64,000 bases of DNA from Octopus sinensis. Lineage: Eukaryota. A program made the position numbers and the translations under genes. The notes under the pieces were generated by a model, which was not told the origin of the DNA, did no database searches, and saw only the letters and a program-made list of their open reading frames with translations. Location of the stretch: NCBI RefSeq assembly GCF_006345805.1, contig NW_021835963.1:124001-188000 (forward strand), given 5' to 3'. Below are positions 13,581 to 47,850 of the stretch, one piece after another. Positions within the stretch are counted from its first letter, which is position 1. Each line of letters starts with the position of its first letter.

Positions 13581-13584
13581 TAAT

Positions 13585-21243: not shown

Positions 21244-22458
21244 CTGAAAATTAACAAAAACAACAAAATCAATAAAGTGCCAAATTATGTTTTACAAATG
21301 TAGAGAAATGTCTTTCTTTTTTTCTTTTTCTTTCTTTTTTTTTTGCTGGTGGTGGAGAATATTTTTCATATTTTCTTATATTTTAAGTAAAGATTGAAAG
21401 AATACGATCGTGAATACAAACAGCCGAAACATATGTTGTCTTTTTTTTCATTTTGCTTGTTTCAGTCATTGGACTGTGGCCATGCTACAGCGTCGCCTTG
21501 AAGAAATTTCGTCGAACGAATTGATTGCCCTAAGCATGGTACGAATTCTATCGAATCCTTATACAGAACCGGTAAGTTACGGGGACGTAAACAAACCAAA
21601 ACCGACTTCAAGCAGGCGTAAGGAACAAGCACAAACACAAAGACACATACAGACACGCGCGCGCGCACACATATTCTTTCTACTAGAAGCACAAGACCTA
21701 AAATTTTCGCGAGGGGACTAATCGATCATCGATTGGTACTTATTTAATCGATCCCGAAAGGATGGAAAGCAAAGTCTGTGTGTCAATTTGTTGGCCTATG
21801 GGAAACATCATGTCATGGTAGAATAAAATTGAACAAAAATAAAACAGAATTCTTTTTAGGAGAAATGGAAGCTTGTTTGATGTTTCGAGCCTATGCTCTT
21901 AAACAGAAGGGGATGAAGGTAAAAGATGGACGGAAAGGGGAAAAAAATAACAGAGAAAAAAAAACGTGTCTGGTGTAATTTATTTCAAAGCAAAATAAAG
22001 TGACGTAATTCGCATACATACAATAATCTACGAGGCCATAGCTTGTGGCTTTCGATTTTGATGTCAAACAAAATGCTCAACGGCATTTCTCACGGTTTTA
22101 TGTTCTGAGTTCAAGTCTCACCGAGGTAGACTTTGTCTTTCGTCAAAACAAGTACCAGTTAATCATTGGGGGTCGATGTAATCGACTTCCCCTTCCCCTA
22201 AATTTCAGGCCTTGTGCTTATAGCAGAAAGGATTACGCTGAATCTCTAGCGTATCGGACAAAATGCTTTGTGGCATTTCCTCCGGATTGACGTTCCGAGA
22301 GCAAGTTTCACCGAAATCGAATCTGCCTTTCATCCTTTCGGGGTTGATAAAATAAGGATCATTCAAGTACTGAAGCCGATGCAATCGACAAGGCTCCTCC
22401 CGCAGTATTTCAAGCCTTGTATAGTAGAGTAGAAATAACAAGTATTATTTAAGCTAAG

Positions 22459-22680
22459 GTGGAGGCGTGTGGCTCAGTGGTTAGAGTATCGTTAGATTGT
22501 GGTTTCGATTCCTGGACCGCGCGATGCGTTGTGTTCTTGAGCAAAACACTTCATTTCACGTTGCTCCAGTCCACTCAGCTGGCAAACATAAGTAAACCTG
22601 CGATGGACTGGCGTCCCATCCCAGTGGAGAATATATACACCATTGAAACCGGGACACCTGTCCTCATAAGCCTGGCCTGG
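22459..22680 (+). mobile_element. tRNA-derived SINE, family S4 (duplicated at ~46960-47171, -)
   Basis: A-box tggctcagtgg, B-box ggtttcgattcc, body ttgtgttcttgagcaaaacacttcatttcacg. Confidence 0.75.
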
Positions 22681-23512
22681 ATCGAGAAGGATATGTTTAT
22701 TTTATATAAGGCGGCGAGCTGGCAGAATCGTCAAAGCCTCGGGTAAAATGCTTAGAAGAGATTTAGGTTCTACATTTTGAGTTCAAATTCTGACGAGGTG
22801 GACTTTGCCTTTCACCTTTTTGAAGTCTACAAAATAAGTACCAGTTGAGCACTGGAGTCGATGTAACCGACTTACACACACCACATTAAGATTCTAGCGA
22901 AAGTTGAACCCTTTATTAATTTTTGTGTGTCATGAAATGCGTATTATAAGGAATTCTCACCAGTTTTGTATTTAGTTATATATAAGTCCAACTGTTCATG
23001 TCGAGGTATTATTTTATCAATTTTTTTATCTCAGAAGTTATATTTTTTTCAGTTGTATTACATTAGATCCTATTTTAAAGTCTATTTTTATGTACAAATT
23101 TATCTGTCACATAATATCGCATGAGGTTCAGGTACCGTAATCAAACCTCCACTTATACGATCATGAGGTTTCTGTTTTGTATATCGATACATCTAAGTTG
23201 AAGTGCACTATCTAGGGCGATCTAGGAAGCAGTTTTAAGTTCTAAGTTATTTCCACAAATAACAAATGCTCGTTCATTTAGCAAGAAATTATGTTAAGAG
23301 GTCAAGGTAATCGATTTACGCCATGGCCTCAAAATTACTGACCAAGATTTGAAATTTGAAACCGATGTATTAGTATTCCTTTTGTTTCTTCTCGATTGCA
23401 AATAATACTGCTTTCGTTTCGGTATTTCAAGTCAACCATGATGCTTATATAACATTCCCCACTTTTTCCACTTGAAGTCTCAAATGCTCATGTATACCCA
23501 CAATAAGATATA

Positions 23513-23717
23513 TCTTCTTTATATATAAAAGTCAAGTTGTGTGTCTGTCTCCTACGATTTAGATTCCTAACTACTCAACGATTTAAAAAAAATTTACCAT
23601 AATTTTTTTTCCATTTTTAATGCATTTTTTTTTGCTATTTTTTTGGCTATAACTCTCTAAAAATGCTTTATAGTTATTTCCCTTACAAACCCGAGCAACG
23701 CCGGGCGATACTGCTAG
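23513..23717 (+). mobile_element. Non-autonomous Helitron-like element, copy 3
   Basis: TC...cccgagcaacgccggg...CTAG inserted at A|T with no TSD; empty site visible at 45308-45326. Confidence 0.9.
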
Positions 23718-25468
23718 TTATGTTTAAAAGACGAGATGGTCATGCATTTAGCAGCCTCAGTAGTAAGATAATGGTGGGTCAAGAATCGATTATCGTTTAG
23801 CTTGTATCACTGAAATTTTGTGTAACAAAACACGATTTTCTGAAATTCGTTGAAGATAATGAATTTGCCACGAAAGATTATATAACCCCGGACATTCCAA
23901 ACTTTTTACATTAGTGTCCCGCTTTTTTGAAACACAAATTTTCCTGATGCATTAAGTTTTCTTCGATTTACCTCAAATCAAAGAAATTAACAAATAAACA
24001 ATTAAAAATATTCTCTCTCTCACCCACTCCTCTTCCTCCCCTTCTCTAAAACAAATCGTCTGCGTTTTTACTCAGAGAGGGACGGGCTTCGCATGTTCGT
24101 GTACGCAAAACACTCCGTATCTCGTGGCGGCATTATTACGATTCCATGAAGAAGTGAAGAGAAGAGACAATTGACTATCGTACCATGTCGCCTTACTCGT
24201 GTGGTATGACAGTCACCAGATTTTACTTAATTTTGTGGCACATCAAGGGATTATCGCCGACATTCTAACGTGTTGCGGCACATCGTTTCATAATCTCTTG
24301 TATAGTCTATTGAATTTAGCGCGGTTATAAACTTGCACTTATTTTTATCGTCCTCTTCGGGATTCGAACCTACAAAGGAGAAGCCGATCATTTAGACTAT
24401 TTTAATTCAACATTTGTAATCTGTCACTCCAACGTTTAACCCATTTGGGGAACCCATCGATCATAAGTGATGATGCAACTTCACACGTATGCACTGGCCA
24501 GGGCGGGAGTTTTCTTTAGAAGCCCCACTAGTATCTCATATATATAGGTTCCCTGCTCTTCATGACACCGCTGTATATCCAAGGGAAAGATCGTAGGCGT
24601 AGGGCTGATGTTGTTCAAGCTCCAGCGTTGTCGCAGACATCGCTATCAGAACGGAAAGGTCTGAAACGAATCCCACAGCGTAACCCGTCCGACGCTCAAA
24701 TTATTTCTTGGATTTGTCCTTGCTTATCGACCCCGAAAGAATGGAAATTACAAAGTTAGCCGCAACGGGATTTGAACTCAAATCGTAGAGAGCTGAAACA
24801 TATGCTTTAACGACTTTGCCAATTCGTTGCCTCAACAACCTCAAGAAATAAAGTGCCTTTAGGATAATATAAGAAAACAGCAGACAAAGGTAAAGGTCAT
24901 TTCTAGAAGACTTATCTCTTAATTGTTAAAGAAGGAAAAATTTGCGTCCTTCTAGCGGGGCCCTTCTGTTGCAAGCATGTGAACCAGATGGCCATTCTGA
25001 GAATAGTTTCATCCTGCCACTCTCAGTGACCCATGAAAAGGGCTAAGGAAGCTGTTCTTGCTTCTTTCATTGAGCCATTAACCCTTTCATTGCATTATCA
25101 AATTTCTTGGTCATATCTTACTGATATTGTTCACCCAAACACACACATATACACAATGATAATAGAAATTATATTTTCTACGTCTCCAACACTATCAGTA
25201 TCTCCTGTACGTTTGGGTTTCATATTCTTGCTCTGTAAAGAGACAGTTGAAGAATTATGTGAAATAAGGAAAATCTGAGAAATTGACCTTTATAAAAAGC
25301 GCCACCAAGAGTGTCTCTACTTCTCGCAGTATATGGAGAGGATTTCTTTTTTCAAAGCCGTGGGTAATCCCGCTTTCCGCAATTAAGGCTAATTAACATT
25401 TTGAGAGGATTTCCGCATTCAAAGAGTTAAAAAAAAACATGGTAAGTAAAGATTTTTAAGCTGCTTAC

Positions 25469-25674
25469 CTCCGACACAAAAGATTGATGTTTTCCTTCAT
25501 CGTAAGTATATCCGTTAATACATGCTAACGTGCGGTTCGAACTGTTACTGCTCCGACTGAATATTTCTATCTGACATTTTCCGTACACTACGTCGTGAGT
25601 ATCGTTGCTCTCGTAGCCGTAGTCGTACAATTGAGATATGTTCAAATTAGCACATCTGGAAGTGGGGATTGAAC
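25469..25674 (-). CDS. SLC22 gene A exon 2 (extracellular loop GSIPTSRCANLN...CINGYTYDEGKHQSFVSE)
   Basis: Acceptor tttcag, donor gtaagc; phase 1 to 0. Confidence 0.92.
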
Positions 25675-26899
25675 CTGAAACAGTAACAAAGCATTTTAAT
25701 AGTATTTTACACATTTATTCTTTTACTGAATTCGGTAATTGAATCACGGACATGCTGGAGCACCACTTTTGACGGTTTCAGTTCATCATATCTATCTCAA
25801 CTACTTAATTAGTCTTGTACTGTAATGGCGAAGGTTTACCGTCTTGGTGTAAAGGAACACAAATTGATACATAGATTTACCCTAATGTACAAAAGATTAC
25901 ATACACACACTCATATATACACGAACGCAAGTACACACACACACACACACACACACGCACTCCCCCTCTCTCTCTCTCTCTCTCTTTCTCACACACACAC
26001 GCACACACACACATACTCCGTATTTACCAGCACTCTCGTATAAGGCGCACCCTATTTTATAAATATATTTTATGGATAAAATAAATTTTTTCATACTTTT
26101 ATCGAAAGATATTTTTAAAGTGGTTTCGTGGGGCAGAAATGTATGCTTCTGCGCATGTAAATATATTACCGTGACACTATAATGGAACAATGCACGAAAC
26201 CATAAATTTACCAGAACTAAACTACGATATGGTGGTTCTGCATTTCTCATTATCTACTTTCGGATCATACTGGATGTATGAGGGAAGAACAGTAACAGAA
26301 GAAAAAAGAACCTCCGTAGACCAAAGGTAAAGACAAGTCGTAAGGGGACATGGAAAATACAAAATGATACAATTGTATATACTTATACTTAAAATATCTT
26401 TTGATTTAACGTCAAAATTAAGGCAGTTTGTAGGAAGTAACGCTTATGGAAAAAGTTGGGTGTCTTTCGATCTTAGGGAAAAGGATAAAAATAAATTTGA
26501 AAAGCTCAGAACTAGAAAAAGGAGCGATTGACCCTTTGAACGGTCAATTTTTAAAAATACATTTCGAGTATTCCCCTGATAAATCATCTTTATTTACCGT
26601 TTAGTGGTGGCGGTGAAGATTATGGGTAGTTGTGGTGATGTTGATGATGGTGGAGTTAGTGGTGGTAAGGTTACGATCACGAAAGCCAGTGTTGGAAATC
26701 AATTAAAAACTGCAGACCTTGTTCACAGTTACTAGCTGAGAAGGGTTTCGGAAATCTCCACGGGATGTCAATGATTCAATTAAATGGGTGCATATAAAAG
26801 ACATGAGAACGACTGTGGTTAATAAAAGGAAGAATCGGTCTAATAATGAAAGAACGAACTTCAAGCACGAAGTCCAAGAAACACAACGCTTAAAGATTT

Positions 26900-28290
26900 T
26901 TAACAAGTGGTGTCAGTAACTATTCCGCCCTGCTATACATAGAACAACAAACAATGGGTCCGCAGAAAGCAAGGTTGCCCTATTGAAATCCATCCTGAGA
27001 ATGTGCTGTATAGGCTAGTAAGAGTATACTGAATACACCGGCCAACAAGAATACATCTTTCTACTTCTCTATAATGTGAAAGTCTCAAAATCATTTCAGG
27101 CTTTCAAATACACTAAAATGTAGTTTGAACCACTTCTTGTTTTATATTTGCATAGCTGGAGATTGATGCCCTGCGGGATACAAGATAGAAAGAAGCTTCC
27201 GTATTTCAAACAGTCAAGAGTCAAAGGGCTCTTTTCACTACTCTGTTAAAACACTGTGAAGCTTCCATTCCGTTTTTGCTTTGGCTCAAATATCACCAAA
27301 CACTTTTAATGATTCCAAAAGGAACAAGGGCCAATAAAATTCATGCTTGTATTAAATCGTTATCTCTTTGGACCAAAGTTAAAGCATCAAGCTGTCTACA
27401 AACATGAGAATCATTCTTTTCGAAGATTATCTGCCTGGTCATTTTAACAAATTTTATTATAAGTTGCAGACAGATTTCATTCTGGCAGTAAGGTACCACT
27501 GACCAAGCTCCTATAAGTGCAGTGATTAAGTCAGAGGTAAAATTGATTTCAAGAGTATTCCTCAAGCTGCAACATCAAAAACTAACACACAATCGACCAT
27601 GCAAAACACATGCTTGGGTTCACAACACCAACTGTCAGTTGTTGCAGGCAAATCCAGCGAATAGTTGTATCTTCAAATCAATAAATATTCTTTTCTACTC
27701 TAGGCAAAAGGCTCGAAATTTTGGGGGAGGGGGCTAGTCGATTAGATTAACTCCAGTATGCAACTGGTACTTTAATTTATAACCCTGAAAGGATAAAAGG
27801 CAAAGTCAACCTCGGCAGAATTTGAACTCAGAACATAAAGACAGAAGAACTACTGCTAAGCATTTCGCCTGGCGTGCTAACGTTTCTGCCAGCTCGCCGC
27901 CTTTCAAATCAATAAATATTGTTGTTGATCAGGAAGAACTAATTCACTATTCAGCAGAATTTTATGATTCACAGGAGCTTTCAGGTCTACTCCCACACAG
28001 ACTTTACCTAAGAGAAGGTCCTAAACAATTCTGGTGCATAATTTAAATAGCTGCAGCTATGCTGTTTATTTTAAATAACCATGGCTATGCACAAGACAAA
28101 TGGTTAAGAAGCTAATTCCACATGGCATTAGGACTCCTAACCACACTGCCGCAAAAGGGAGTACGCAATAAAACTCAGAATTCTACCGATACCAAGAGAT
28201 GTGCCCTTTCTATTTAGAAAGCGTATCAATTCCCAGAAAATCAAAGTCTGACTACATCAAATGATAAATCACAAGAGCTGAACTGCATCA
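26900..28290 (+). pseudogene. Decayed Helitron RepHel (Rep linker plus PIF1-like helicase) fragment
   Basis: IPPCYT*NNKQWVRRKQGCPIEIHPENV, EYIFLLLYNVK, KLSTNMRI, FKSINIVVDQEELIHYSAEFYDSQELSGLLPHRLYLREG, WLCTRQMVKKL, ILPIPRDVPFLFRKR, NDKSQ; heavily disrupted and internally deleted. Confidence 0.8.
27690..27902 (-). mobile_element. SINE family S2 (ggcggcgagctggcag head) with 18-bp TSD. About 20 further copies or fragments, e.g. 4390-4550, 5105-5270, 7970-8115, 34620-34815, 42295-42485, 44390-44625, 48750-48970, 53570-53800, 60430-60845, 61915-62470, 63825-64000
   Basis: TSD ttcaaatcaataaatatt at 27672-27689 and 27903-27920; central gcctttcatcctttcggggtcgataaa.taagtaccag block (resembles the Nin/Deu-type SINE domain, from memory). 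Confidence 0.85.
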
Positions 28291-28461
28291 AGAAATATTA
28301 CTTACTTTGCTAATGACCAATTTTATGTTTATGTTAGATTCTCAAGAGTTGGAAACCCAATAATCTCTTTATATTATTTTTGGTAAAACTAAAACCATAT
28401 TTTTGGGGGGGGATTTGGTTTGCAAGATTCTTTATATGAGTTCGTGTGTTGAAGCATATTC

Positions 28462-28838
28462 TGTTGTGTCTGGGGAGAGTCATTTTCTTTTTGTGCCTTA
28501 TAATATAACACACTTATAATATAACACACATACATACATACATATATGCATGTGCATACACACACATATATACCTACATACACATGCAAACACACACATA
28601 CATACATACGTACATGCATGCATGTATAGGAACACAGACACACTGACTCACACATATGCGCACAAACAAACAAAAGGGAACGCAGTGTAAATAAAGGACA
28701 GAGTCAAAACTATTGAAAAGGTTGCAAGACGCAACGAAAGTTTTAGGAAAATAAGAATATGAAAAAAGTGGAAATTTTGCCGGTGAGCATGTTAAATTAT
28801 AAGGCATGAAAAGAAAATGACTCTCCCCAGACACAACA
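28462..28838. mobile_element. MITE with ~43-bp TIRs
   Basis: tgttgtgtctggggagagtcattttctttttgtgccttataat is the reverse complement of attataaggcatgaaaagaaaatgactctccccagacacaaca. Confidence 0.8.
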
Positions 28839-29329
28839 TAATTTTTTTATCACTGCGTATATTGCATTTCTCATATTTGGATATGTGGGTTTACTCTCAA
28901 CACTACGGTTTCCACATGTCATAGAATATCTTTATTCTATGGCTAGTTTTCCTCCCGTCACTTGGCTATCTATTCAATTTTCAAATAATTTTAAGAATTA
29001 AAGACAATGTTCACTTATAGTTGCAAATAAAATAAAAGTGTTCTCACATTTCCTTAATATTTATTTAATATGCTTGAATTAAATATACGGCACAAGTGGA
29101 ATTCAATGTACTGTTAATATAAAGGGCACATTTTTAACATAATGCATTAGTCATAAGGCTGCGTTAAATGTACTGGTAAAAGATTTTATTCTCTTTAACG
29201 AGAAGCAACGTTACAAGGTATCTGCATTTCCTACTAAATACGGTTTACTATCCCGGAATTAAACCATGAACGCTTAAACAGTATTTAGCTACCTTGTAAT
29301 TATTCTCCTGGATTTTTCCTATGAATTAT

Positions 29330-29830
<501 letters not shown>

Positions 29831-30086
29831 TAAGATAAGATTAGAAAATGGAGAAATAAATAACAATAAGAAGGGGATCTTTGGTGTTATTAAGGCATTA
29901 TTTAATTAAGATGGGAGTATGATAAGGTAAGTTTACAGTAATTACCAGGAGTGCCTCTGGATACATCTATCCCTTAGATGGCTTTCATAAATCTAACTTA
30001 TATCAATTTAACTATTTCACCATAGATTGGTGAAACAAAGTTGAATAGTTAGTATTAATTGATTTTTAAGCCATTGGACGAGTATA

Positions 30087-30205
<119 letters not shown>

Positions 30206-30329
30206 TGTGTCAGCTATTTGAGAATAACACTTTTAAAGACTATCAGTTTTCCAAACTCTAACTAAATATCTTCTCTTTTTGCAGCCTGGAAGCTTCGAAT
30301 CTAACAGAGACGATGAAAAAGTATATGAA

Positions 30330-31580
30330 TCTCGCCTTAACCGCTAACCAATGATTGCAACCTTTGTAAATGTCATCAGATCCTTCTTGTTTGAGAACAG
30401 GAAGGAGCTTCTAGCCTCTGATGGGAATGTGTCTTGAGTGGTCAAAAAAAAGGAGAAAAAGACATTCTCAACGGTCAGACAACGTCAGAGAAATCGAGTT
30501 TGTCCAGTGAGTCCAGGACATCAACCCGAAGGTCAATGAGGAACATCATCTCCATGTGTAGGCGTCAACGTTTAAACGTGTGATGCATAAAGATATCATG
30601 TGAAAATCCTGTGTTATGAGAAGTCAGTTCATCTCTCTATATATAAACGGCAGTTTGTCTGTGCGTGTTTCTGTGTGTCTGTTTGCTTGTACCATCACCT
30701 TGACCACGGCTTTCAACTGATTCTGATGAAACTTGACACACACATAGCCCAATGTCATAATTCAAAACTAACGCAGCGAAAATTTTGAAAAGTTCCCCCA
30801 GTTCTGAAAAAAATCGATAAATTCGACATGGGGTCGAGAATCAGAAACACAAACCGCAAACTGTCTAGGGGACGCAACTCCACCTTTTTTAACTAAAAAA
30901 AAAATTTACCATCATTTTTTCCAATTTTTTTGCTATTTTTTGGCTATAACTCTCTAAAAATGCTTTATAGTTATTTCCCTTACAAACCTGAGCAACGCCG
31001 GGCGATACTGCTAGTTTCTGATAAAACCCATAAGCACCCTGAGGAACCTGACATGCTCCCCTTCTTCTCAGGTGAGAAGAACTATGTTCGAAATTTTTAA
31101 AAATGATTTAGATGATGGTACACCAAGTTGCCATCATCTAGATCGTTTGGAGGGTCGTAAGCAATGAGGGCCATGTCATGCTTCTTCATGTTTTCTCCGC
31201 AAAGTTTTAGGGTTAATGCAGCAGCCTACACCGAGACAATTGAGCCTGTTGTCAAGTTCTGGATCAAGAGAGTTGCTCGGGGAAACTGTACGTGTTACAG
31301 CAAAAATCTGCTGCCTTCCACACAGCCTACACGGTTCAGAAGTGGTTGGCCGAACATTTTCACGATCATGTTACCTCTAACATTTAATCTCCTAGTCATT
31401 CTGATTTTAATCCTCTGAGTTACTCTGTCTGGAGCATCGCTGAGAGAAAGACCAACAAGCATACTCACAATGCCAAGGACTCGCAGATGTCTGTTTTGGG
31501 GGATTTTATGGCAAACATGAATGAAGATTCCTTGTTCAACGTATTTAGTCATTTCAGAAGCCGTATCGAAGATACAATCG
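30330..31580 (+). mobile_element. Tc1/mariner (maT/DD37D-like) transposase remnant split by Helitron-like copy 4
   Basis: MRSQF|ISDKT across the insertion; VSNEGHVM; RVNAAAYTE; QQKSAAFHTAYTVQKWLAEHFHDH; DFNPLSYSVWSIAERKTNK; FRSRIE. Confidence 0.8.
30632..31014 (+). mobile_element. Non-autonomous Helitron-like element, copy 4
   Basis: TCTCTCTATATATAAA...cctgagcaacgccgggcgatactgCTAG at A|T; removing it restores the transposase frame. Confidence 0.85.
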
Positions 31581-31978
31581 ATTAAAAGCGTAAGGACTGG
31601 AGTGGTACTTTATTTTATCGACCCCAAAAGAATTAGAGGTAAAGTCAACTTCGGAGGAATTTCAACTCAGAATATGAAGAATCGGAAGAAATGTTTCAAA
31701 GTATTCTGTCCGGCTTGTTAACGTTTCTGTCAGTCAAAAATTTCTGTCAGTCAAACATTTACATTAAAATTCCGCCAATGTTAGATTGGCCTTAAAAAGG
31801 GGACATGGATAAAAGGTAAGACAAATGACCCCTGTAGAAGGCATTAGTCACTCCTGACTAGAAGACAAAAAGAAAAAAACCTCTTTCATTGGATACAAGA
31901 TTATGGTTCTTCCAAAAACGGTGGGGGAGGGATTTAAAATCTACAAAAGAAAAAAACAAATATTTTTTCAGCACCTAC

Positions 31979-32105
31979 CGATAAATACAATCTTCAGCAA
32001 AGCAACAACGCAAGGAATCATGGAAGCGTCACTGAGCAGGTATTGGGTGAGCTGGAAGAATCCTTTTGGTTTCAAGCTAACCAGTAGAGAATCGACGTCG
32101 ATCAT
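31979..32105 (-). CDS. SLC22 gene A coding exon 1 (MIDVDSLLVSLKPKGFFQLTQYLLSDASMIPCVVALLKIVFI-G)
   Basis: ATG at 32105, 127 nt, donor G|gtaggt. Same length and clear homology to the paralogue exon at 445-571. Missed by the ORF track. Confidence 0.9.
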
Positions 32106-32162
32106 TTTGTCCGCTGTTTAACTGTAACACTAATTATTGTTTCTTTGGAAATGCTGATAATG

Positions 32163-32235
32163 TCGACGAGGGCGATGGAGACGACGAGGGCGATGGAGAC
32201 GACGAGGGCGATGGAGACGACGAGGGCGACGGCGA
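32163..32235. repeat. 18-bp GC-rich minisatellite (GACGAGGGCGATGGAGAC-type) x ~4, just upstream of the SLC22 A start codon
   Basis: Direct reading. Confidence 0.9.
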
Positions 32236-32780: not shown

Positions 32781-32828
<48 letters not shown>

Positions 32829-37606: not shown

Positions 37607-38804
37607 ATATTTTCGTTAAGAAATGCGCAATTCCTGGTCTGTTTATGCGATAAGAATTGCTTAAACAGGCCAGGCATAGTATATTTCTTGATGGCGAAAA
37701 AACAAAATAATGACGATTTGATTACGTATCAAACAGTTAACAATGTACCAAGCCTTATCCTCGAATTTACAATCTTGTGTTAATTAGTTCGTTTTATTTA
37801 GCCCGTTCAGCTGACTGGTCCATCTTCATTATACAAGTGAGATTATTATTTTAATAAAAGTGTTCGGAGAATACACGTGCATGATTTTAAATGTTCGTTC
37901 AAATGTTTTTTAAAATAATTATCTGAAACAGCACTTTGTCTTTTCCTTCGGGACCGAATATTTGGTTTATTAAACCCTCTCTTTCATGAGCAATCCAGAA
38001 ACATAAATACTCTTTTACTCTTTACTTGTTTCAGTCATTTGACTGCGGCCATGCTGGAGTACCGCCTTTAATCGAGCAACTCGACCCCGGGACTTATTCT
38101 TTGTAAGCCCAGTACTTATTCTATCGGTCTCTTTTGCCGAACCGCTAAGTAACGGGGACAGAAACACACCAGCATCGGTTGTGAAGCAATGCTAGGGGGA
38201 CAAACACAACACACAAACACACACACACACACACACACATACACATATATATATATACATATATACGACGGGTTTCTTTCAGTTTCCGTCTACCAAATCC
38301 ACTCACAAGGCTTTGGTCGGCCCGAGGCTATAGTAGACGACACTTGCCCAAATGTATATGATTTCTATTTCTCCGTCTCCTGCAACGATGTAATCCTTGA
38401 GATACGTGATTAAGCCGATCGAGATGAATTTCCCAGTTATTACGATTCGTCAAATTATAGAAAAAGGGGTCAAAGTTGGGAACCAAAAGAAATTACAGCG
38501 GAGACATACAAGAAAATAGAAACTGTAATTTTTTTGTTCCCAACTTTGACCCTCCATAAATCTTAAATTTTATTCTAGAATTTATGGGAGCAACTGTCTT
38601 TGAATACTCATATTGTCGTTAAATGCTCGAAATGAAGAGTAGATAAACAGCTGACAACTGATGAAGGCTCCTTTGTCTCTGTTTACTTGCCCTGTTTTCT
38701 ATTACTTCTTGTTTGCGTATTTCACTCGTTTTTCCCTCATTTATTTATATATTTCATGCTATTTGCACCGTTGGTGACGCCCTGTATCCATATATGCATG
38801 TATG

Positions 38805-38847
<43 letters not shown>

Positions 38848-38933
38848 ATTTATTATATACATATATATTATATATTATTTATTATTTAATCGATTGCGAC
38901 GCATCCATTTCCGAGTAAGTACATATATATAAT

Positions 38934-39250
<317 letters not shown>

Positions 39251-40184
39251 ACAATAACATATCATCAACAAAAAGCTAACTCTGAAGAGAAGACCACCTC
39301 GAGGAACCCCACACAAAGACTCGGATTACTGTGTACCATCAGTCAAAAGTGTCCCCCTCCAATTTTTCCACCCTTTTTTTATGGTCGTATGAGTAGAATA
39401 GGCACATCTAGTCCCCTAAACCATGCTGGAGTTAGTTCTTTTTATAAAACATGCTACCTTTCCATCCTCACATTACTCTTGTGGCCGATAAGGGCTTGTC
39501 CACGAAGTAAAACCTTGGTTTTTAAACTGTTTTCACTACGTCCACCACAAAACATTCTTCCCTACTTCAATGACGAAGAGTGACCACCTTTCCATGCCAA
39601 AGAAAAGCGATGGGTTGGTCTTCATCCTAGACTCGAATGATGGTGACATTTGTCACGCACGTGACAGTCGCTGCTCGACACAAGTCTGCAAAATGGCAAT
39701 GCATGACCAATGAACGAATGCGTGCATGATGGATTCCTTGACCTGCGCACTTCTCGGAAAGGTTCGGCTGACAGCACTTGAGTGACCGTAGATTTTGTTC
39801 TGAACATACAATATTCACCTGTATTCCTGCCAAACTAAGGAATTCCGGGAGTTGTCCATAATCTCCTAAATTAATTTCCCTCCAAACGAAACTTCCCTGG
39901 CGATCTTTGTTGGCATCCAGAATCGGTCTTAGCCACTGTCGGTTATATATTCCTTTAATATGCGTTAGTTAACGTTCTACTAACCGCATTTTCAGGATGG
40001 TAAGAGTGCAGTGAGCATCTGGCAACATTCCAGAACCCGAAAAACCTACTTGCTGAGGTGGGAGGAGAGGAGGACAAGGAAGAGGAGGGGAAGGAGGAGA
40101 AAGAGGCGGGGCAAGAAAGGGAGGACACGCTATTTCGGAATATTATATTTCATTTTAGCAGAACCAAACATTTTAACTATCACT

Positions 40185-40450
40185 AACACACACACACACC
40201 CACACACTTACACACACACACACTCACACACACACACTCTCACACACACACACTCACACACACACACATGCACGCACACACACTCACACACTCACACACT
40301 CACACACACACACATGCACGCACATACACACACACACTCACACACACACACTCACACACTCACACACACACACATGCACGCACACACACCCACACACTTA
40401 CACACACACACACTCACACACACACACACACACACGCACGCACACACCGT
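40185..40450. repeat. Degenerate (CA)n microsatellite
   Basis: Direct reading. Confidence 0.97.
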
Positions 40451-40608
40451 GTACCGCACACGCACATGCCACACACAAGCACATGCACAAAAACGTGAAC
40501 TGAAATAGGATTATATAATAAGTCTATGCAAATAAGCTGCGGAAGGGCATAAACGTGATGTCACCGAGAAACCCAGTTGAAAGATGTCTATCTCCATATA
40601 TATATATA

Positions 40609-40830
40609 CTAGCAGTATCGCCCTGCGTTGCTCGGGTTTATAAGGGAAATAACTATATAAGCATTTTTAGAGATGTAAAGTATAATAGCCATCTCAATAT
40701 GGCTAACCACAAAGGGGGGGGTGTTACTGTAGCTTTTTACGTTCTGAGATTTAATTATAAATTTTTAGAGAGTTACTTCCCTTATATATGCCAAAAAATG
40801 CATCAAAAATGGGGAAAATTGATGGTAAAT
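40609..40830 (-). mobile_element. Non-autonomous Helitron-like element, copy 5 (3' part only)
   Basis: CTAGcagtatcgccctgcgttgctcgggtttataagggaaataac is the reverse complement of the family 3' end. Confidence 0.8.
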
Positions 40831-40946
40831 AACACAAGGTAACAATTTTCAAATAAAAAATTGTTTATTGTATTTTTTTTTTGTTTATGAATCCATTTTT
40901 TCTGCTGATTCCAAAAATGAAATTATTTTTCATGTATCATCAACAG

Positions 40947-41135
40947 AGGCGCAGGAGTGGCTGTGTGGTAAGTAGCTTGCTTACCAACCACATGGTTCCG
41001 GGTTCGGTCCCACTGCGTGGCATCTTGAGCAAGTGTCTTCTGCTATAGCCCCGGGCCGACCAATGCCTTGCGAGTGGATTTGGTAGACGGAAACTGAAAG
41101 AAGCCCGTCGTATATATGTATATATATGTATATAT

Positions 41136-41171
<36 letters not shown>

Positions 41172-41385
41172 TTGTGTGTCTGTGTTTGTCCCCCTAGCAT
41201 TGCTTGACAACCGATGCTGGTGTGTTTACGTCCCCGTCACTTAGCGGTTCGGCAAAAAGAGACCGATAGAATAAGTACTGGGCTTACAAAGAATAAGTCC
41301 CGGTGTCGATTTGCTCGACTAAAGGCGGTGCTCCAGCATGGCCGCAGTCAAATGACTGAAACAAGTAAAAGAGTAAAGAGTAAGA
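40947..41385 (+). mobile_element. tRNA-derived SINE family S1 with internal (TA)/(TG) microsatellite. About 20 copies, e.g. 3400-3802(-), 5750-6193(-), 8490-8950(-), 9050-9490(+), 33190-33550(-), 38010-38350(-), 45531-45924(-), 49980-50320(-), 52305-52640(-), 53905-54290(-), 58195-58590(+), 61008-61410(+), 62970-63420(+)
   Basis: Head ggcgcaggagtggctgtgtgg (A-box) and gggttcagtccc (B-box); CORE-like cttgggcaagtg; tail cagtcaaatgactgaaacaa(gtaaaaga)n. Confidence 0.92.
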
Positions 41386-41399
41386 GAGAGAGTTTAAAA

Positions 41400-41710
41400 A
41401 ATATGTCGACTTTCCTAGGAAATCACAAAGATCCTAATTACAAACAGCTGGTAGCAAAGCTTATTGAAAACTTCAAGAAAATTGGTTGTCGTATGTACTT
41501 AAAGGTTCATTTTTTGCACTCTCACCTAGATTTTTCCCCGAAAACTTGGGTGATGTCAGTGAGGAGCACCAGAACATCGCAACTATGAAAAGAAGATACC
41601 TAGGACGATGGAATACTGCTATAATGGGAGATGATATATGGTCTCTAGTCAGAAGAGATGAAGGTGTACACTCCAGAAAATATCGATCGTTAAAGCACTT
41701 CTCATCTTAA
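41400..41710 (+). mobile_element. DNA transposase C-terminal remnant (Chapaev/CMC-like)
   Basis: FLGNHKDPNYKQLV..GCRMYLKVHFLHSHLDF-FPENLGDVSEEH..MKRRYLGRWN; superfamily assignment from memory. Confidence 0.55.
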
Positions 41711-42090
41711 GAAAAGAGTTATCGAGGCATTTACAGTGCAGAGTTTTATTGTTTCTTTTTGTTCTAACTAATATTATACTTCCTAAATACCTTTCAATAT
41801 ATGAAAAAGTACTAAATGTGGTGTAATTATCCTTACAATACTAGAATTGATTGAACCAACAAAATGCTGTAGAGAAAAGTTACAAATATAACGAGCAAAT
41901 ATGAAATTAGGAATAAATAAATAACTATCGATGTTAGGTAAAAATGAATGTGATTTTTTAATTTAGTGGCAAAAAATGCATATATGAACATTAAAAAATA
42001 CAAATAAACAAAACATGTTTTACATTGTGTAATCTGTGAATGGGCAAAAACGTGTTGTCACCGAGAAACCTAGTTGAAAGATGTATATTT

Positions 42091-42121
<31 letters not shown>

Positions 42122-43199
42122 GCGAATACAAAATACATGGATATCGTTTGTGAAATAGAAGCATGACAGTCGTTTGACAGAATGGTGTATCTGTGTCCTT
42201 ACGTGAAATTGGGGAAGTTAGTTATCATCGTCAACCTGCCAACACTTTACTCCAAGATAACCCCACAATTACCAAAATAAAACAAATTAAAACAAAATAG
42301 GCATTTCGTCTGCCGCTACGTTCTGAGTTCAAATTCCGCCGAGGTCAACTTTGCCTTTCATCCTTTCGGGGTCGATGAAATAAGTACCAGTTACGCACTG
42401 GAGTCGATATAATCGACTTAATCCGTTTGTCTGTCCTTGTTTGTCCTCTCTGTGTTTAGCTCCTTGTGGGTAATAAAGAAATAGTTATATATATTCAGAC
42501 ATTAACACACTTAAGAGTGGTTCTGCTTTTTCTAACACTATCTACTTAATTTATCAACAAGTTTTAATTTTCTACTTCTTTACTTTTTTCTTCTCACTTA
42601 TCGAAAGGGTGGGGGGTCCATGGCAACGAATAAATAAATCAGATATAGCACGTTTCACTTGTTATCTGCTCAGCGGTCATTTTACCAATAGTGGCAACGT
42701 CTTTGTATCATAATTAATGTGAACATTCAATTGAAGGGAAATATACTACGTTACACGTCCAGAGATAACATCTCTTATGGACGTATTATGTTTCGAAACA
42801 CAATATATATATATATATAGAAGACGTCCCAATAGTGGCTAACGAGAACGCTTGATGCATTTCGGCCACGTTGGGCCTCATCAACCTCTGCCTCTCTTCC
42901 CGTTGCTTTGCCAGCATCTTCCATCAAATCATCAACGACTTTCTGTAAACCGATTACCTATTCTTGTTTGTATGCGGAAACCTCTTTGGTCAGATATTTA
43001 TGACTGCGATAAAATAATGAAGGCAATATTTATTAAGCAAGTGAACACTACTATACAAAGAAATAATTAGAGGTAAAAAAAACTCTGAGTAACAGTTTTT
43101 TTTAGATGTCTTAGCAGCTTTATTAATAAAGCATATTACTCTAATTCCGGTATTCGAATACTATTTTTCCATCCTGTTTCACATTTATGTGCTTACTCT

Positions 43200-43260
<61 letters not shown>

Positions 43261-43436
43261 TACTAATATAGGATGAAGCTTTTTTACAGAAAAAAATTTC
43301 ATTAAATAAGTGGCAGCATATTAAAATACCTTTAAAGGTATAATTATAATTATATATATATATATGTGTGTGTGTATGTCTATATATGTATATATAGAGA
43401 TAGATACATACATATATATATACATATGTGTGTATA

Positions 43437-43593
<157 letters not shown>

Positions 43594-44635
43594 CGGTTCG
43601 GCAATAAAACCTAATAAAATAAGTACAAGGCTGTGAAAAAAATGTAAAATTCCTGGGGTCGATTTGTTCGGCTAAAACTCTTCAAGCAGTGCTCCAACAT
43701 GGCCGCAGTCAAATGACTGAAACAAGTAAAAGAATAAAAGAATATATATATAATGTTACGAAGGATAAATAACTTTATTGATCGTGTGACAGATTTGAAG
43801 TATGCTCCACATTTTTGTGCGTCTTTGCCGTGTGGCGGACGATTTGAAATGATGGAGGAAAGCGCGCTGTCAGTTGGCATCGTGAAGAACGCACGGTGTC
43901 GGTTACATCGAAAACAAACAGTAAAATGGAAGAGTCAGTGTGAAGTTGGCTGCGAAAATTGTCGGTGTTACGTTGGCAACGTAAACAAACGTCGGGTGTG
44001 AATTTGGTAATGAAGATGTTACACAAAACATCCAGACACATCTGACTACTTCTTCCACTCTAAGCAAGTTGATTTGCTGGGCTGGCTTGCGGTTTCCTTG
44101 CTGCTGACTTGACTGTTGGATCCGTGTTAGTGTCAAGAGATCCCATTTTGCAACATTTGGTGTCATAAGTGGGATTTTTATTGCTGCAGTGAGCCAATTA
44201 TTCGTTATGGAGTTGAAAAGAGTGCACACAAAGAGACAGGCATGGGAAGAAGATGTGTTTTGGGCTACAATCATGAAAATACTACAAGACCAATGTGATC
44301 GACTGACTGAGTTTAAGTAAAAGCAGAAAGCGCAGCCTACACAACTTCAAGACAGTTGGACATATGGTGCAAGGATCTCAAAACCATGTCCTTGTTTGTC
44401 CTCTCTGTGTTTAGCCCCTTGTTGGTAGTAAAGAAATAGGTATTTCGTCTGGCGCTACGTTCTGAGTTCTAACTCCGCCGAGGTCGACTTTGCTTTTCAT
44501 CCTTTCGGGGTCGATAAAACAAGTACCAGTTATGCACACTGGGGTCGATATAATCGACTTAAACCGTTTGTCTGTCCTTGTTTGTCCTCTCTGTGTTTAG
44601 CCCCTTGTGGGTAATAAAGAAATAAGTATAGATTA

Positions 44636-47600
44636 ATGTTGAATAAAAATAATCTAGATGATTAGCTTCTCCTTTGTGAGTTCAACTCTGGATATGGGCG
44701 ATAAAAACAAGTACAAGTTTATAACCGCGCTAAATTCAATAGACTATACAAGAGATTACGAAACGATGTGTCGCAACACATTAGTATGTCGGCGATAATC
44801 CCTTGACGTGCCACAAAATTAAGTAAAATCTAATGACCGTCATACCACACGAGTAGTCAATTGTCTCTTCTCTTCACTTCTTCATGGAATCGTAATAATG
44901 CCGCCACGAGATACGGAGTGTTTTGCGTACATAAACATGCGAAACCCGTCCCTCTCTGAGTAAAAACGCAGACGATTTGTTTTAGAGAAGGGGAGGAAGA
45001 GGAGTGGGTGAGAGAGAGAATATTTTAAATTGTTTATTTGTTAATTTCTTTGATTTGAGGTAAATCGAAGAAAACTCAATGCATCAGGAAAATTTGTGTT
45101 TTAAAAAAGCGGGACACTAATGTGAAAAGTTTGGAATGTCCGGAGTTATATAATCTTTCGTGACAAATTCATTATCTTCAACGAATTTCAGAAAATCGTG
45201 TTTTGTTACACAAAATCTTCAGTGATACAAGCTAAACGATAATTGATTCTCAACCCACCATTATCTTACTACCGAGGCTGCTAAATGCATGACCATCTCC
45301 TCTTTTAAACATAATATATCTTATTGTGGGTATACATGGGCATTTGAGACTTCAAGTCGAAAAAGTGGGGAATGTTATATAAGCATCATGGTTGACTTGA
45401 AATAACGAAACGAAAGCAGTATTATTTGCAATCGAGAAGAAACAAAAGGAATACTAATACATCGGTTTCAAATTTCAAATCTTGGTCAGTAATTTTGAGG
45501 CCATGGCGTAAGTCGGTTACCTTGACCTCTTTTACTTGTTTCAGTCATTTTACTGTGGCCATGCTGGAGCACCGCATTCGGTCGAGCAAATCGACCCTGG
45601 GACTTATTATTTGTAAGCCTAATACTTATTCTATCGGTCTCTTTTGCCGAACTGCTAAGTTACGGGGACGTAAACACACCAGCATCGGTTGTCAAGCGAT
45701 GTTGGGGGGGGGACAAACACAAACAAACGTATACACACACATACATATATATATACATACATATATACGGCGGGCTTCTTCCAGTTTCCGTCTACCAAAT
45801 CCACTCACAAGGCTTTGGTCGGCCCGAGGTTATAGTAGAAGACACCTGCCCAAGGTTCTACGCAGTGGGACTGAACCCGGAACCACGTTGTTGGTAAGCA
45901 AGCGACTTACCACACAGCCACTCCTTAGCTTTTATCTCACATAATTTCTTGCTAAATGAACGAGTATTTGTTATTTGTGGAAATAACTTAGAACTTAATA
46001 CTGCTTCCTAGATCGCCCTAGATAGTGCACTTCAACTTAGATGTATCAATATACAAAACAGAACCCTCATGATCGTATAAGTGGAGGTTTGATTACGGTA
46101 CCTGAACCTCATGCGATATTATGTGACAGATAAATTTGTACATAAAAATAGACTTTAAGATAGGATCTAATGTAATACATCTGAAAACAATATAACTTCT
46201 GAGATAAAAAAAATTGTTAAAATAATACCTCGAGATAAACATTTGAACTTACATACCGTGGCACTTCTTAGGTTACGACGAGGGTTCCAGTTGGTCCGAT
46301 CAACGGAACAGCCTGCTTGTGAAATTAACGTGCAAGTGGTTGAGTACTCCACAGACACGAGTACTCGTGTACGTAGTTGTCGGAGAGATTCAGCATGACA
46401 CGGGGTGTTACAAGGCTAGTCCTTCGAAATACACGTACAACAGAAACAGGAAGAAAGAGTGAGAGAAAGTTGTGGGGACAGAGTACAGCAGGGTTCGTCA
46501 CCACTCCCTGCCGGAGACTCGTGGAGCTTTAGGTGTTTTCGCTCAATAAACACTCACAGTGCCCGGTCTGGGAATCGAAACCGCGATCCCACAATCGCGT
46601 GTCCGCTGCCCTAACCACTGGGCTATTGCGCCTCCACGGACTTATATATATATATCTAAATATAGAATTGGTGAGAATTCCACATAATACGCATTTCATG
46701 ACACACAAAAATTAATAAAGGGTTCAACTTTCGCTAGAATCTTAATGTGGTGTGTGTAAGTCGGTTACATCGACTCCAGTGCTCAACTGGTACTTATTTT
46801 GTAGACTTCAAAAAGGTGAAAGGCAAAGTCCACCTCGTCAGAATTTGAACTCAAAATGTAGAACCTAAATCTCTTCTAAGCATTTTACCCGAGGCTTTGA
46901 CGATTCTGCCAGCTCGCCGCCTTATATAAAATAAACATATCCTTCTCGATCCCAGGCCAGGCTTATGAGGACAGGTGTCCCGGTTTCAATGGTGTATATA
47001 TTCTCCACTGGGATGGGACGCCAGTCCATCGCAGGTTTACTTATGTTTGCCAGCTGAGTGGACTGGAGCAACGTGAAATGAAGTGTTTTGCTCAAGAACA
47101 CAACGCATCGCGCGGTCCAGGAATCGAAACCACAATCTAACGATACTCTTACCACTGAGCCACACGCCTCTACCTTAGCTTAAATAATACTTGTTATTTC
47201 TACTCTACTATACAAGGCTTGAAATACTGCGGGATGAGCCTTGTCGATTGCATCGGCTTCAGTACTTGAATGATCCTTATTTTATCAACCCCGAAAGGAT
47301 GAAAGGCAGATTCGATTTCGGTGAAACTTGCTCTCGGAACGTCAATCCGGAGGAAATGCCACAAAGCATTTTGTCCGATACGCTAGAGATTCAGCGTAAT
47401 CCTTCTGCTATAAGCACAAGGCCTGAAATTTAGGGAAAGGGAAGTCGATTACATCGACCCCCAATGATTAACTGGTACTTGTTTTGATGAAAGACAAAGT
47501 CGACCTCGGTGAGACTTGAACTCAGAACATAAAACCGTGAGAAATGCCGTTGAGCATTTTGTTTGACATCAAAATCGAAAGCCACAAGCTATGGCCTCGT

Positions 47601-47850
47601 AGATTATTGTATGTATGCGAATTACGTCACTTTATTTTGCTTTGAAATAAATTACACCAGACACGTTTTTTCTCTGTTATTTTTTTCCCCCTTTCCATCC
47701 ATCTTTACCTTCATCCCCTTCTGTTTAAGAGCATAGGCTCGAAACATCAAACAAGCTCCATTTCTCCTAAAAAGAATTCTGTTTTATTTTGTTCAATTTA
47801 TTCTACCATGACATGATGTTTCCCATAGGCCAACAAATTGACATACAGAC
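44636..47850. repeat. Right arm of long inverted duplication
   Basis: Matches 21774-24414 apart from two extra SINEs (45531-45924, 46257-46635) and absence of the 23513-23717 insert. Confidence 0.95.

What the first reader, a model, noticed from the sequence alone, without database searches (positions are those of the whole stretch)
21774..47850. 2.4-kb inverted duplication, arms 20 kb apart, bracketing SLC22 coding exons 1-2
Seen: 21774-24414 (intron 2 of gene A) is the reverse complement of 44636-47850 (upstream of the ATG exon), including non-repetitive sequence. Inference: (a) recombination between arms would invert the ~20-kb spacer, flipping exons 1-2 away from exons 3-10 and giving a structural on/off allele; (b) if transcription starts beyond 47850, the arms would pair in pre-mRNA into a kb-scale duplex looping out exons 1-2, which could favour skipping or back-splicing and provide an ADAR substrate in an animal group known for heavy A-to-I editing.
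Basis: partly seen in the sequence, partly recalled or inferred. Interest (0 to 1): 0.7.

Follow-up and report, generated by a model that had tools for sequence, protein, structure and literature searches.

The report
Old inverted duplication around octopus exons
An octopus transporter gene carries two inverted copies of a 2.4-kb non-coding stretch, one in an intron and one upstream, which have exchanged sequence and could in principle flip the first two exons; this is an ordinary kind of genome structure, and no flip or RNA role was seen.

Summary
Window 21771-24414 is the reverse complement of 44635-47853, with 2413 aligned bases at 96.5% identity and a 20,220-bp spacer. The window is Octopus sinensis contig VCDQ01001855.1. 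The spacer holds coding exons 1-2 of an intact 10-exon SLC22 member 8-like gene on the minus strand. The left arm lies in intron 2. The right arm lies 12.5 kb upstream of the ATG.

The arms are a mosaic of apparently single-copy DNA (about 65-70%) and old shared SINE fragments. They have no target-site duplications or transposon termini. Three transposon blocks are private to one arm. A comparison with the O. vulgaris left arm shows that the two copies separated about 3.7 times earlier than the species split. It also shows that about 1 kb of the upstream arm was later overwritten by the intron arm (0.7% versus 5.1% divergence).

So the arms do recombine, and a crossover would detach exons 1-2, as in the human F8 intron-1 inversion. 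No inversion allele was seen: O. vulgaris has the same orientation. The RNA-duplex and back-splicing idea is untestable here because the transcription start is unknown. The right arm could not be checked in a second assembly. Another kb-scale inverted pair lies nearby, so the structure looks ordinary.

The parts
21771..24414 (.). Left arm (2644 bp). It lies in intron 2 of the SLC22 gene, 527 bp from the exon 3 acceptor and 1054 bp from the exon 2 donor.
   Evidence: The O. vulgaris ortholog is L003 21933-24565, at 97.85% identity over the full length.
44635..47853 (.). Right arm (3219 bp), the reverse complement of the left arm. Its inner end is 12,529 bp upstream of the ATG.
   Evidence: It has 57 private substitutions against the left arms of both species outside the converted tract.
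21937..22947 (.). Low-divergence tract, left-arm side. It is inferred to be the donor in an arm-to-arm gene conversion.
   Evidence: 6 mismatches in 990 columns against 5.5% elsewhere; 0 of 200 permutations reached the observed value; the distance between the left arms of O. sinensis and O. vulgaris is 1.4% both inside and outside the tract.
46684..47693 (.). Low-divergence tract, right-arm side. It is inferred to be the acceptor, overwritten by the left-arm sequence. It ends about 35 bp before the private SINE insertion.
   Evidence: In the tract the right arm has only 5 private sites in 993, where about 46 would be expected from the rate outside the tract.
46252..46648 (-). SINE with a tRNA-like head (judged by eye), private to the right arm (397 bp), with a TAAGTyC target-site duplication. 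A family copy lies at 14949-15323.
45533..45938 (.). Copy of the abundant ~400-bp SINE family, private to the right arm (406 bp). Up to 36 BLAST matches elsewhere in the window cover this block.
23513..23717 (.). 205-bp repeat block private to the left arm. It is also present in the O. vulgaris left arm, so it is older than the species split.
24415..44634 (.). Spacer (20,220 bp) that a crossover between the arms would invert. It holds exons 1-2, intron 1, 12.5 kb of upstream DNA and a hAT/ZBED5-like ORF remnant (35918-36883, minus strand).
31979..32105 (-). Coding exon 1 (ATG at 32105) of the SLC22 member 8-like gene.
25469..25674 (-). Coding exon 2 (extracellular loop).
5349..21243 (-). Coding exons 3-10: 21243-21013, 16696-16494, 15847-15566, 12198-12064, 9616-9531, 8404-8284, 7695-7623 and 5585-5349. 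An inversion would strand them without a start codon.

Best explanation
This is a genuine, fairly old, low-copy inverted duplication of about 2.4 kb of ordinary non-coding DNA in Octopus sinensis. One copy sits in intron 2 of an intact SLC22 member 8-like gene. The other sits 12.5 kb upstream of that gene's start codon. It is most likely a passive by-product of local DNA duplication and not a device.

Shown directly:
- the two arms, their mosaic make-up of unique DNA plus old shared SINE fragments, and their sharp ends without transposon hallmarks;
- three later transposon insertions, each private to one arm;
- the exact exon map.

Inferred from the three-way comparison with O. vulgaris:
- the two copies separated about 3.7 times earlier than the sinensis/vulgaris split;
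- later, about 1 kb of the upstream copy was overwritten by the intron copy through gene conversion, so the arms do meet and recombine.

Inferred from geometry and from the human F8 int1h precedent:
- a crossover instead of a conversion would invert the 20-kb spacer and detach exons 1-2 and any proximal promoter from exons 3-10, giving a null allele of one member of a tandem SLC22 cluster. This is a structural liability, possibly a rare polymorphism, and not a demonstrated switch.

How the duplication first arose (template switching or ectopic break repair) is not resolved.
For: Arms and identity. Sharp ends, no extension of homology and no target-site duplication around either arm or around the whole 26-kb unit. 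Mosaic content: (65-70% without any other copy in the window plus about 200 kb (including N runs) of other Octopus DNA). Both arms share the same nested SINE fragments. Private insertions, one with a clear target-site duplication. No N in the window. Species and locus. Intact 10-exon gene.

Three-way counts. Outside the tract (22948-24414, 1243 sites) there are 57 sites private to the right arm, 6 to the sinensis left arm and 11 to the vulgaris left arm. Inside the tract (993 sites) the counts are 5, 2 and 12. The left-arm distance between the two species is 1.4% in both parts, which excludes selection or low mutation as the cause of the tract. Heterogeneity test: (Fisher p about 2e-12; 0 of 200 permutations). 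F8 precedent: 1041-bp inverted repeats, one in intron 1 and one 140 kb upstream, whose recombination displaces exon 1 (PMC8776779).
Against: - The right arm was seen in only one assembly. Colinearity with O. vulgaris stops at window ~43520, which is 1.1 kb short of the arm. The fetched O. vulgaris locus ends in species-specific repeats.
- If the right arm is missing at that site in O. vulgaris, it may have been inserted recently from a third, diverged copy. The age estimate would then fail.
- Genome-wide copy number of the 'unique' parts could not be measured. Only about 230 kb of a genome I recall (not checked here) to be roughly 2.7 Gb was available.
- Two of the four arm boundaries abut ends of SINE fragments. 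This hints at a retroelement-linked origin that I could not model.
- No read-level or population data were available.
Confidence: 0.72

Rival explanations
1. The arms are two members of a dispersed repeat family (a non-autonomous transposon or a multi-copy segmental duplication) that landed independently in opposite orientations. The local pairing is then a coincidence.
For: The genome is saturated with repeats. Small pieces of the 'unique' 22488-22676 segment have weak matches elsewhere. Colinearity with O. vulgaris breaks just before the right arm, as expected if the right arm were a lineage-specific insertion. Another kb-scale inverted pair lies about 20 kb beyond the window's start on the same contig.
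Against: There are no target-site duplications, terminal repeats or tails at either arm. There is no coding capacity and no protein homologs. Of the left arm, 65% has no other copy in about 230 kb examined. Both arms share the same internal arrangement of degraded SINE pieces.
Confidence: 0.12
2. RNA-level function. Transcription starts upstream of 47853, and the arms pair in the pre-mRNA into a ~2.4-kb duplex. This duplex loops out exons 1-2, promotes skipping or back-splicing, and is hyper-edited by ADAR.
For: The arms are near-perfect complements. A 453-nt sample gives a predicted duplex of -912 kcal/mol against about -179 for shuffled controls. The left arm is certainly intronic. A possible acceptor (ttacag) lies 16 nt upstream of the ATG.
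Against: There is no evidence for any exon or start site upstream of the ATG exon. The record gives the coding range only, and the two RefSeq protein isoforms differ only at the C-terminus. The candidate acceptor lacks a pyrimidine tract. The arms are 20 kb apart, with many closer SINE pairs competing for pairing. The arms have drifted to 5% divergence and absorbed three insertions, which suggests the duplex is not under selection.
Confidence: 0.05
3. The pair is a working inversion switch or a maintained inversion polymorphism that turns this SLC22 paralog on and off.
For: The geometry is right and the arms have recombined. The gene sits in a tandem family, where a null allele could be tolerated.
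Against: O. sinensis and O. vulgaris both show the 'on' orientation. No recombinase or other dedicated machinery is evident. The only transposase-like ORF in the spacer is a degraded hAT/ZBED5-like remnant, also present in O. vulgaris. Arm identity outside the 1-kb tract has decayed to about 95%.
Confidence: 0.03
4. Assembly artefact. The right arm is real sequence but has been placed or oriented wrongly in the contig.
For: Only one assembly shows it. The O. vulgaris locus that could be fetched does not reach it.
Against: The window has no gaps. The right arm differs from the left by 84 substitutions and two private SINEs. It is more diverged from the left arm than the other species' left arm is, so it is neither a collapsed or duplicated haplotype nor a hairpin-read artefact.
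Confidence: 0.05
5. The inverted duplication is the footprint of a past inversion made by staggered breaks, as described for Drosphila inversions (Drosophila; PMC1885836), and not a substrate for a future one.
For: Inverted duplications flanking an inverted segment are the signature of that mechanism (PMC1885836, listed). Neither arm shows transposon hallmarks.
Against: It would require exons 1-2 to have pointed away from exons 3-10 before the event. Yet the paralog beside it, O. vulgaris and O. bimaculoides all have exon 2 on the same strand as the later exons.
Confidence: 0.03

Closest known systems
Human F8 intron-1 inversion repeats (int1h-1 and int1h-2)
   Same: One copy lies in an early intron. 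An inverted copy lies upstream, outside the gene. The arms are about a kilobase long. Recombination between them detaches the first exon(s) and abolishes expression (PMC8776779). Here the best tract is 990 bp at 99.4%, with a 269-bp perfect run.
   Different: The F8 arms are 1041 bp with a single mismatch and lie 140 kb apart, and the inversion is observed in patients. Here the arms are 2.4 kb at 96.5% overall and lie 20 kb apart. Two exons, not one, would be displaced. No inversion has been observed.
Sex-chromosome palindromes with arm-to-arm gene conversion (established knowledge; not looked up here)
   Same: Inverted arms surround a unique spacer, and sequence is exchanged between the arms by gene conversion.
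   Different: Those arms are tens of kb to Mb long and are held at more than 99.9% identity along their whole length. Here conversion touched only about 1 kb, and the rest has decayed to about 95%.
Inverted intronic repeats (such as inverted Alu pairs) that promote circular RNAs and ADAR editing (established knowledge)
   Same: Reverse-complementary sequences lie on both sides of internal exons. The left arm is intronic.
   Different: Those pairs lie in the two introns flanking exons that have both splice sites, usually within a few kb. Here one arm is upstream of the ATG exon, and it is unknown whether that arm is transcribed with the gene at all.
Inverted duplications at staggered-break inversion breakpoints (Drosophila; PMC1885836)
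   Same: Non-transposon inverted duplications flank a segment of tens of kb.
   Different: The flanked segment here is not inverted relative to related species or paralogs.
Foldback or long-TIR DNA transposons
   Same: Kilobase-scale inverted terminal sequences.
   Different: There is no target-site duplication and no subrepeat structure. Host coding exons lie in the middle.

Membership tests
Inverted low-copy repeats that can mediate homologous inversion (F8 int1h type) | Two copies in inverted orientation on one DNA molecule | tested here: met
   This holds within a single gap-free contig.
Inverted low-copy repeats that can mediate homologous inversion (F8 int1h type) | One copy inside an early intron and the other outside the coding region upstream, so that inversion splits the gene | tested here: met
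   Exon map. The left arm is in intron 2. The right arm is 12.5 kb upstream of the ATG.
Inverted low-copy repeats that can mediate homologous inversion (F8 int1h type) | An uninterrupted identity tract long enough for homologous recombination (about 200-300 bp in mammals; from my own knowledge) | tested here: met
   Perfect runs of 269, 196, 169, 169 and 106 bp. 990 bp at 99.4%.
Inverted low-copy repeats that can mediate homologous inversion (F8 int1h type) | Low copy number in the genome (not a dispersed transposon) | tested here: inconclusive
   No further copy of 65% of the arm in about 230 kb of Octopus DNA. The whole genome was not searchable.
Inverted low-copy repeats that can mediate homologous inversion (F8 int1h type) | Inversion alleles actually observed | not testable with these tools
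   No reads or population data. O. vulgaris has the same orientation as O. sinensis.
Palindromes homogenised by arm-to-arm gene conversion | Evidence of sequence exchange between the arms | tested here: met
   The tract has 0.7% divergence against 5.1% elsewhere, while the between-species distance of the left arm is unchanged. This is an inference from substitution patterns.
Palindromes homogenised by arm-to-arm gene conversion | Near-identity (above 99.9%) along the whole arms | tested here: not met
   96.5% overall. The arm ends are at 88-92%.
Terminal-inverted-repeat or foldback transposon | Target-site duplication flanking the unit, plus transposon termini | tested here: not met
   The flanks are GGATGGAAAGC| and |CTGAATTATC, with no duplication. 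Neither arm alone has one either.
Exon-flanking complementary introns that drive back-splicing or ADAR editing | Both arms transcribed within one pre-mRNA, in introns flanking exons that have an acceptor and a donor | not testable with these tools
   The left arm is intronic. Nothing is known upstream of the ATG. No RNA data.
Staggered-break inversion footprint | The flanked segment is inverted relative to an outgroup | tested here: not met
   Exons 1-2 (O. vulgaris) and exon 2 (O. bimaculoides) lie on the same strand as the later exons. The O. bimaculoides locus is gappy, so this outgroup is imperfect.
SLC22 / major facilitator transporters (the gene bracketed) | Sugar_tr / MFS_1 domains and full-length colinearity with SLC22 proteins | tested here: met
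   Pfam PF00083 and PF07690 on exon 3. Exact match to XP_029657375.1, 'solute carrier family 22 member 8-like'.

The most novel reading that the evidence does not exclude
The arm pair generates recurrent or segregating inversions of the 20-kb spacer in octopus populations or tissues. This would give a natural null (or somatically variable) allele of one SLC22 paralog. Alternatively, or in addition, the arms are co-transcribed and form a kb-scale ADAR substrate that gates use of exons 1-2.
Probability: 0.06. Interest if true: 0.6.

Novelty: new member of a known kind. Interest (0 to 1): 0.25.

Why it matters
If the reading is right, this is a tidy invertebrate example of the architecture behind the human F8 intron-1 inversion. 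It carries a dated history: duplication, then transposon insertions, then a directional 1-kb conversion. It makes one cheap prediction, namely that some octopuses carry an inverted, null allele of this transporter paralog. It does not open a new question. Kb-scale inverted pairs seem common in this genome: three in about 230 kb examined, including one about 20 kb beyond the window's start on the same contig. Inverted repeats, arm-to-arm conversion and inversion by homologous recombination are all well understood.

Tried and rejected
- **Homology beyond the arm ends**. Only microsatellites and SINEs match, so the duplication is bounded as stated.
- **Target-site duplications.** None around each arm or around the whole 26-kb unit, so a transposon origin is not supported.
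- **Chimeric retrocopy by template switch.** I considered this because the right arm's inner end meets the 5' end of a SINE unit, and the left arm's outer end meets a truncated SINE piece. There is no tail and no target-site duplication, and the required RNA would be antisense to the gene. Not supported; left as unexplained.
- **Coding or RNA content of the arms.** No Pfam hit, no protein homolog of the 97-aa arm ORF, no Rfam family and no tRNA in the whole window.
- **CpG observed/expected as a promoter proxy**. The window median is 0.79 with peaks scattered everywhere, so it is uninformative.
- **Exact-sequence look-ups.** The O. bimaculoides exon 1-2 model, the arm ORF and isoform X2 were not on record.
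- **A second O. vulgaris SLC22 gene** (P0239). I tried it as a way to reach the region upstream of the ortholog, but it lies 60 Mb away.
- **O. bimaculoides as outgroup**. Exon 3 and the arm sequence are absent from a gappy 8.4-kb stretch, so the state before the duplication could not be read.
- **The upstream exon 61397-61771.** I tried to identify the gene it belongs to, in order to judge read-through transcription. There were no Pfam or NCBIfam hits, only a weak WW-domain match, and no downstream WW continuation.
- **Selection or low mutation rate as the cause of the low-divergence tract.** Rejected, because the left arms of the two species differ by 1.4% both inside and outside it.


Full report
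**1. What is there.**
The inverted repeat search and a self-BLAST of the window show that 21771-24414 is the reverse complement of 44635-47853. The match falls into four colinear pieces at 91.7-97.9% identity. A global alignment gives 2413 aligned columns, 84 substitutions (53 transitions, 31 transversions) and 96.5% identity. The perfect runs are 269, 196, 169, 169 and 106 bp long. The spacer is 20,220 bp. The ends are sharp. A sensitive search of 10 kb around each arm finds nothing but SINEs and microsatellites beyond them.

**2. Where it is.**
A look-up of a neighbouring paralog returned a locus whose first 4558 bases are identical to window 4558-1. The window is therefore Octopus sinensis assembly GCA_006345805.1, contig VCDQ01001855.1, record positions 124001-188000.

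The bracketed gene is annotated as 'solute carrier family 22 member 8-like'. Its isoforms X1 and X2 (XP_029657375.1 and XP_036356006.1) differ only at the C-terminus. The X1 protein maps exactly onto ten GT-AG exons on the minus strand:
- exon 1: 32105-31979
- exon 2: 25674-25469
- exon 3: 21243-21013
- exon 4: 16696-16494
- exon 5: 15847-15566
- exon 6: 12198-12064
- exon 7: 9616-9531
- exon 8: 8404-8284
- exon 9: 7695-7623
- exon 10: 5585-5349

The gene is intact. The left arm is inside intron 2. The right arm starts 12,529 bp upstream of the ATG. A second SLC22 gene begins at 571-443 on the same strand, so this is a tandem family.

**3. What the arms are made of.**
About 70% of the left arm has no other copy in the window. 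The remainder consists of degraded fragments of the local SINE families, and both arms hold them at the same positions. The arms have no Pfam domain, no protein homolog, no Rfam family and no tRNA. Neither arm, nor the 26-kb unit as a whole, is flanked by a target-site duplication.

Three blocks are private to one arm:
- a 397-bp SINE with a tRNA-like head (my reading of the sequence) and a TAAGTyC target-site duplication at 46252-46648;
- a 406-bp copy of the most abundant SINE at 45533-45938;
- a 205-bp repeat at 23513-23717 in the left arm.

This is what a duplicated piece of ordinary genomic DNA looks like after a long time. It does not look like two insertions of a mobile element. However, the genome-wide copy number could not be measured.

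**4. History, from a sister species.**
The O. vulgaris gene model CAI9729660.1 gave a 52-kb locus (L003). It is colinear with window 43226 down to 273 at 94-99% identity. All ten exons are present in the same order and on the same strand. It contains the ortholog of the left arm over its full length at 97.85%, including the 205-bp block.

Site counts from the three-way alignment of the sinensis left arm, the sinensis right arm and the vulgaris left arm:

| Region | Sites | Private to right arm | Private to sinensis left arm | Private to vulgaris left arm |
|---|---|---|---|---|
| Outside the tract (22948-24414) | 1243 | 57 | 6 | 11 |
| Inside the tract (21937-22947) | 993 | 5 | 2 | 12 |

Outside the tract the two arms differ by 5.1%, and the two species' left arms differ by 1.4%. 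On a clock, the arm lineages separated about 3.7 times earlier than the species did.

Inside the tract the arms differ by only 0.7%, while the two species' left arms still differ by 1.4%. The drop is significant: 6 against 78 mismatches, Fisher p about 2e-12, and 0 of 200 permutations reached the observed value. Selection or a low mutation rate cannot explain it, because the between-species distance is unchanged. The left arm did not acquire right-arm variants, so the left arm was the donor and the right arm the acceptor.

The simplest reading is a gene-conversion tract of about 1 kb, roughly as young as the species split or younger. The tract ends about 35 bp before the private SINE in the right arm. 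It begins just after a cluster of nine mismatches at 21924-21936. It is thus bounded by heterologies, as conversion tracts usually are.

**5. What follows mechanistically.**
Arms that undergo conversion can also cross over. A crossover between inverted repeats inverts what lies between them. That would turn exons 1-2 and any proximal promoter away from exons 3-10. This is the architecture of the human F8 intron-1 inversion. There, 1041-bp repeats, one in intron 1 and one 140 kb upstream, recombine and displace exon 1 (PMC8776779). Reading (a) is therefore sound as a prediction. It is not shown that such an allele exists. Both species have the uninverted order, and I had no reads.

**6. The RNA reading.**
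If one transcript contained both arms, they would pair very strongly. A 453-nt sample gives -912 kcal/mol, against about -179 for shuffled controls. Whether such a transcript exists is unknown.
- The public record used here reports only the coding range, which starts at the ATG.
- The protein isoforms do not differ at the 5' end.
- CpG content is uninformative.
- The 16 nt before the ATG are preceded by 'ttacag', but without a pyrimidine tract.
- Back-splicing of exon 2 to exon 1 requires the ATG exon to have an acceptor, and therefore an upstream non-coding exon.
- The decay of the arms to about 95% outside the converted kilobase, together with three insertions, argues against selection for a duplex.

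I rate this reading as possible but unlikely.

**7. Limits and open points.**
- The right arm was not verified in a second assembly. Colinearity with O. vulgaris ends in a microsatellite at about 43520, which is 1.1 kb short of the arm. The remaining 2.5 kb of the fetched locus (a mariner fragment, a CA repeat, a SINE and about 880 bp of unique DNA) matches nothing in the window. If O. vulgaris lacks the arm there, the right arm could be a later insertion from a third copy.
- The right arm cannot be a haplotype duplicate or a hairpin artefact. It is more diverged from the left arm than the other species' left arm is, and it has private SINEs.
- The O. bimaculoides locus (L004) has exon 2 and exons 4-10 on one strand. 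It lacks exon 3 and all unique arm sequence in a gappy 8.4-kb stretch. It therefore could not serve as an outgroup.
- Two of the four arm boundaries coincide with ends of SINE fragments. I tested a template-switch retrocopy model and found no tail or target-site duplication.

**8. How unusual is it?**
Among the window and four other loci (about 230 kb), inverted pairs of 600 bp or more occur three times. One is a 1.5-kb pair at 95.5-99% identity with a 5.7-kb spacer, just downstream of the neighbouring SLC22 gene on the same contig (L001 21154-22724 and 28461-29951). No autonomous element lies between its arms. Kb-scale local inverted duplications thus look like a regular feature of this repeat-rich genome.

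**Verdict.**
The feature is real and its anatomy was correctly described. It is best explained as an old local inverted duplication that has since undergone arm-to-arm gene conversion. It is a plausible substrate for an F8-like inversion. There is no evidence that it acts as a switch or as an RNA element. It is a new member of a known kind, of modest interest.

Noticed in passing
L001 21154-22724 and 28461-29951 (O. sinensis, same contig, about 17-25 kb beyond the window's start): A second kb-scale inverted pair: about 1.5 kb, 95.5-99% identity, 5.7-kb spacer holding SINE, LINE and mariner fragments. It lies just downstream of the neighbouring SLC22 gene. It suggests that local inverted duplications are recurrent here.
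   Followed up: partly
L004 1441-9893 (O. bimaculoides CM046611.1): Exon 3 and the whole left-arm region are missing between exon 2 and exon 4, and most of these 8.4 kb match nothing in the window. The two public O. bimaculoides models split exactly here (A0A0L8HZX9 covers exons 1-2; XP_014767962.1 covers exons 4-10). This could be either assembly gaps or a real rearrangement.
   Followed up: partly
window ~43520-44634 versus L003 1-2489: Colinearity between O. sinensis and O. vulgaris ends in a microsatellite 1.1 kb from the right arm. Each species then has sequence with no counterpart in the other locus.
   Followed up: partly
window 35918-36883 (-) and 13617-14204 / 14563-14817 (-): Two hAT-derived (FAM200/ZBED5-like) ORF remnants. 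The second sits beside a Spin-doc zinc-finger ORF (14563-14817). The O. vulgaris model CAI9729660.1 fuses both remnants with SLC22 exons 5 and 8-10, which looks like an annotation chimera.
   Followed up: partly
window 21734-21776 and 44430-44634: The left arm's outer end abuts a 43-bp SINE piece truncated at ...AAAGTC. The right arm's inner end lies about 10 bp from the 5' start of a SINE unit of the same family. A retrocopy model did not fit.
   Followed up: partly
window 32164-32229: A perfect 18-bp tandem repeat (3.7 copies) lies 60-125 bp upstream of the ATG. The alignment with O. vulgaris breaks here, which suggests a copy-number difference.
   Followed up: no
window 31979-32105 plus 25469-25674: The coding parts of exons 1 and 2 add up to 333 nt, a multiple of three.
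   Followed up: no
window 61397-61771 (-): A long open exon-like ORF (MMDPVG...PLPEGWQEIPDKAT, followed by a GTATGT donor) of an unidentified gene upstream on the same strand. It has only a weak WW-domain match (1tk7) and no Pfam or NCBIfam hit.
   Followed up: partly
window 17810-19442 (+): Reverse-transcriptase ORFs of a LINE (PF00078) inside intron 3, antisense to the gene.
   Followed up: no
window 29326-29833, 6537-7067, 54383-54820; 48695-49388, 56892-57863, 9950-10374: AT-rich self-complementary arrays (the first three) and short tandem duplications (the last three).
   Followed up: no
L001 3988-20603: In L001 the neighbouring SLC22 gene shows matches to exons 1-5 and a last exon, but not to exons 6-9. 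Its annotated product is only 297 aa, so it may be a truncated paralog.
   Followed up: no
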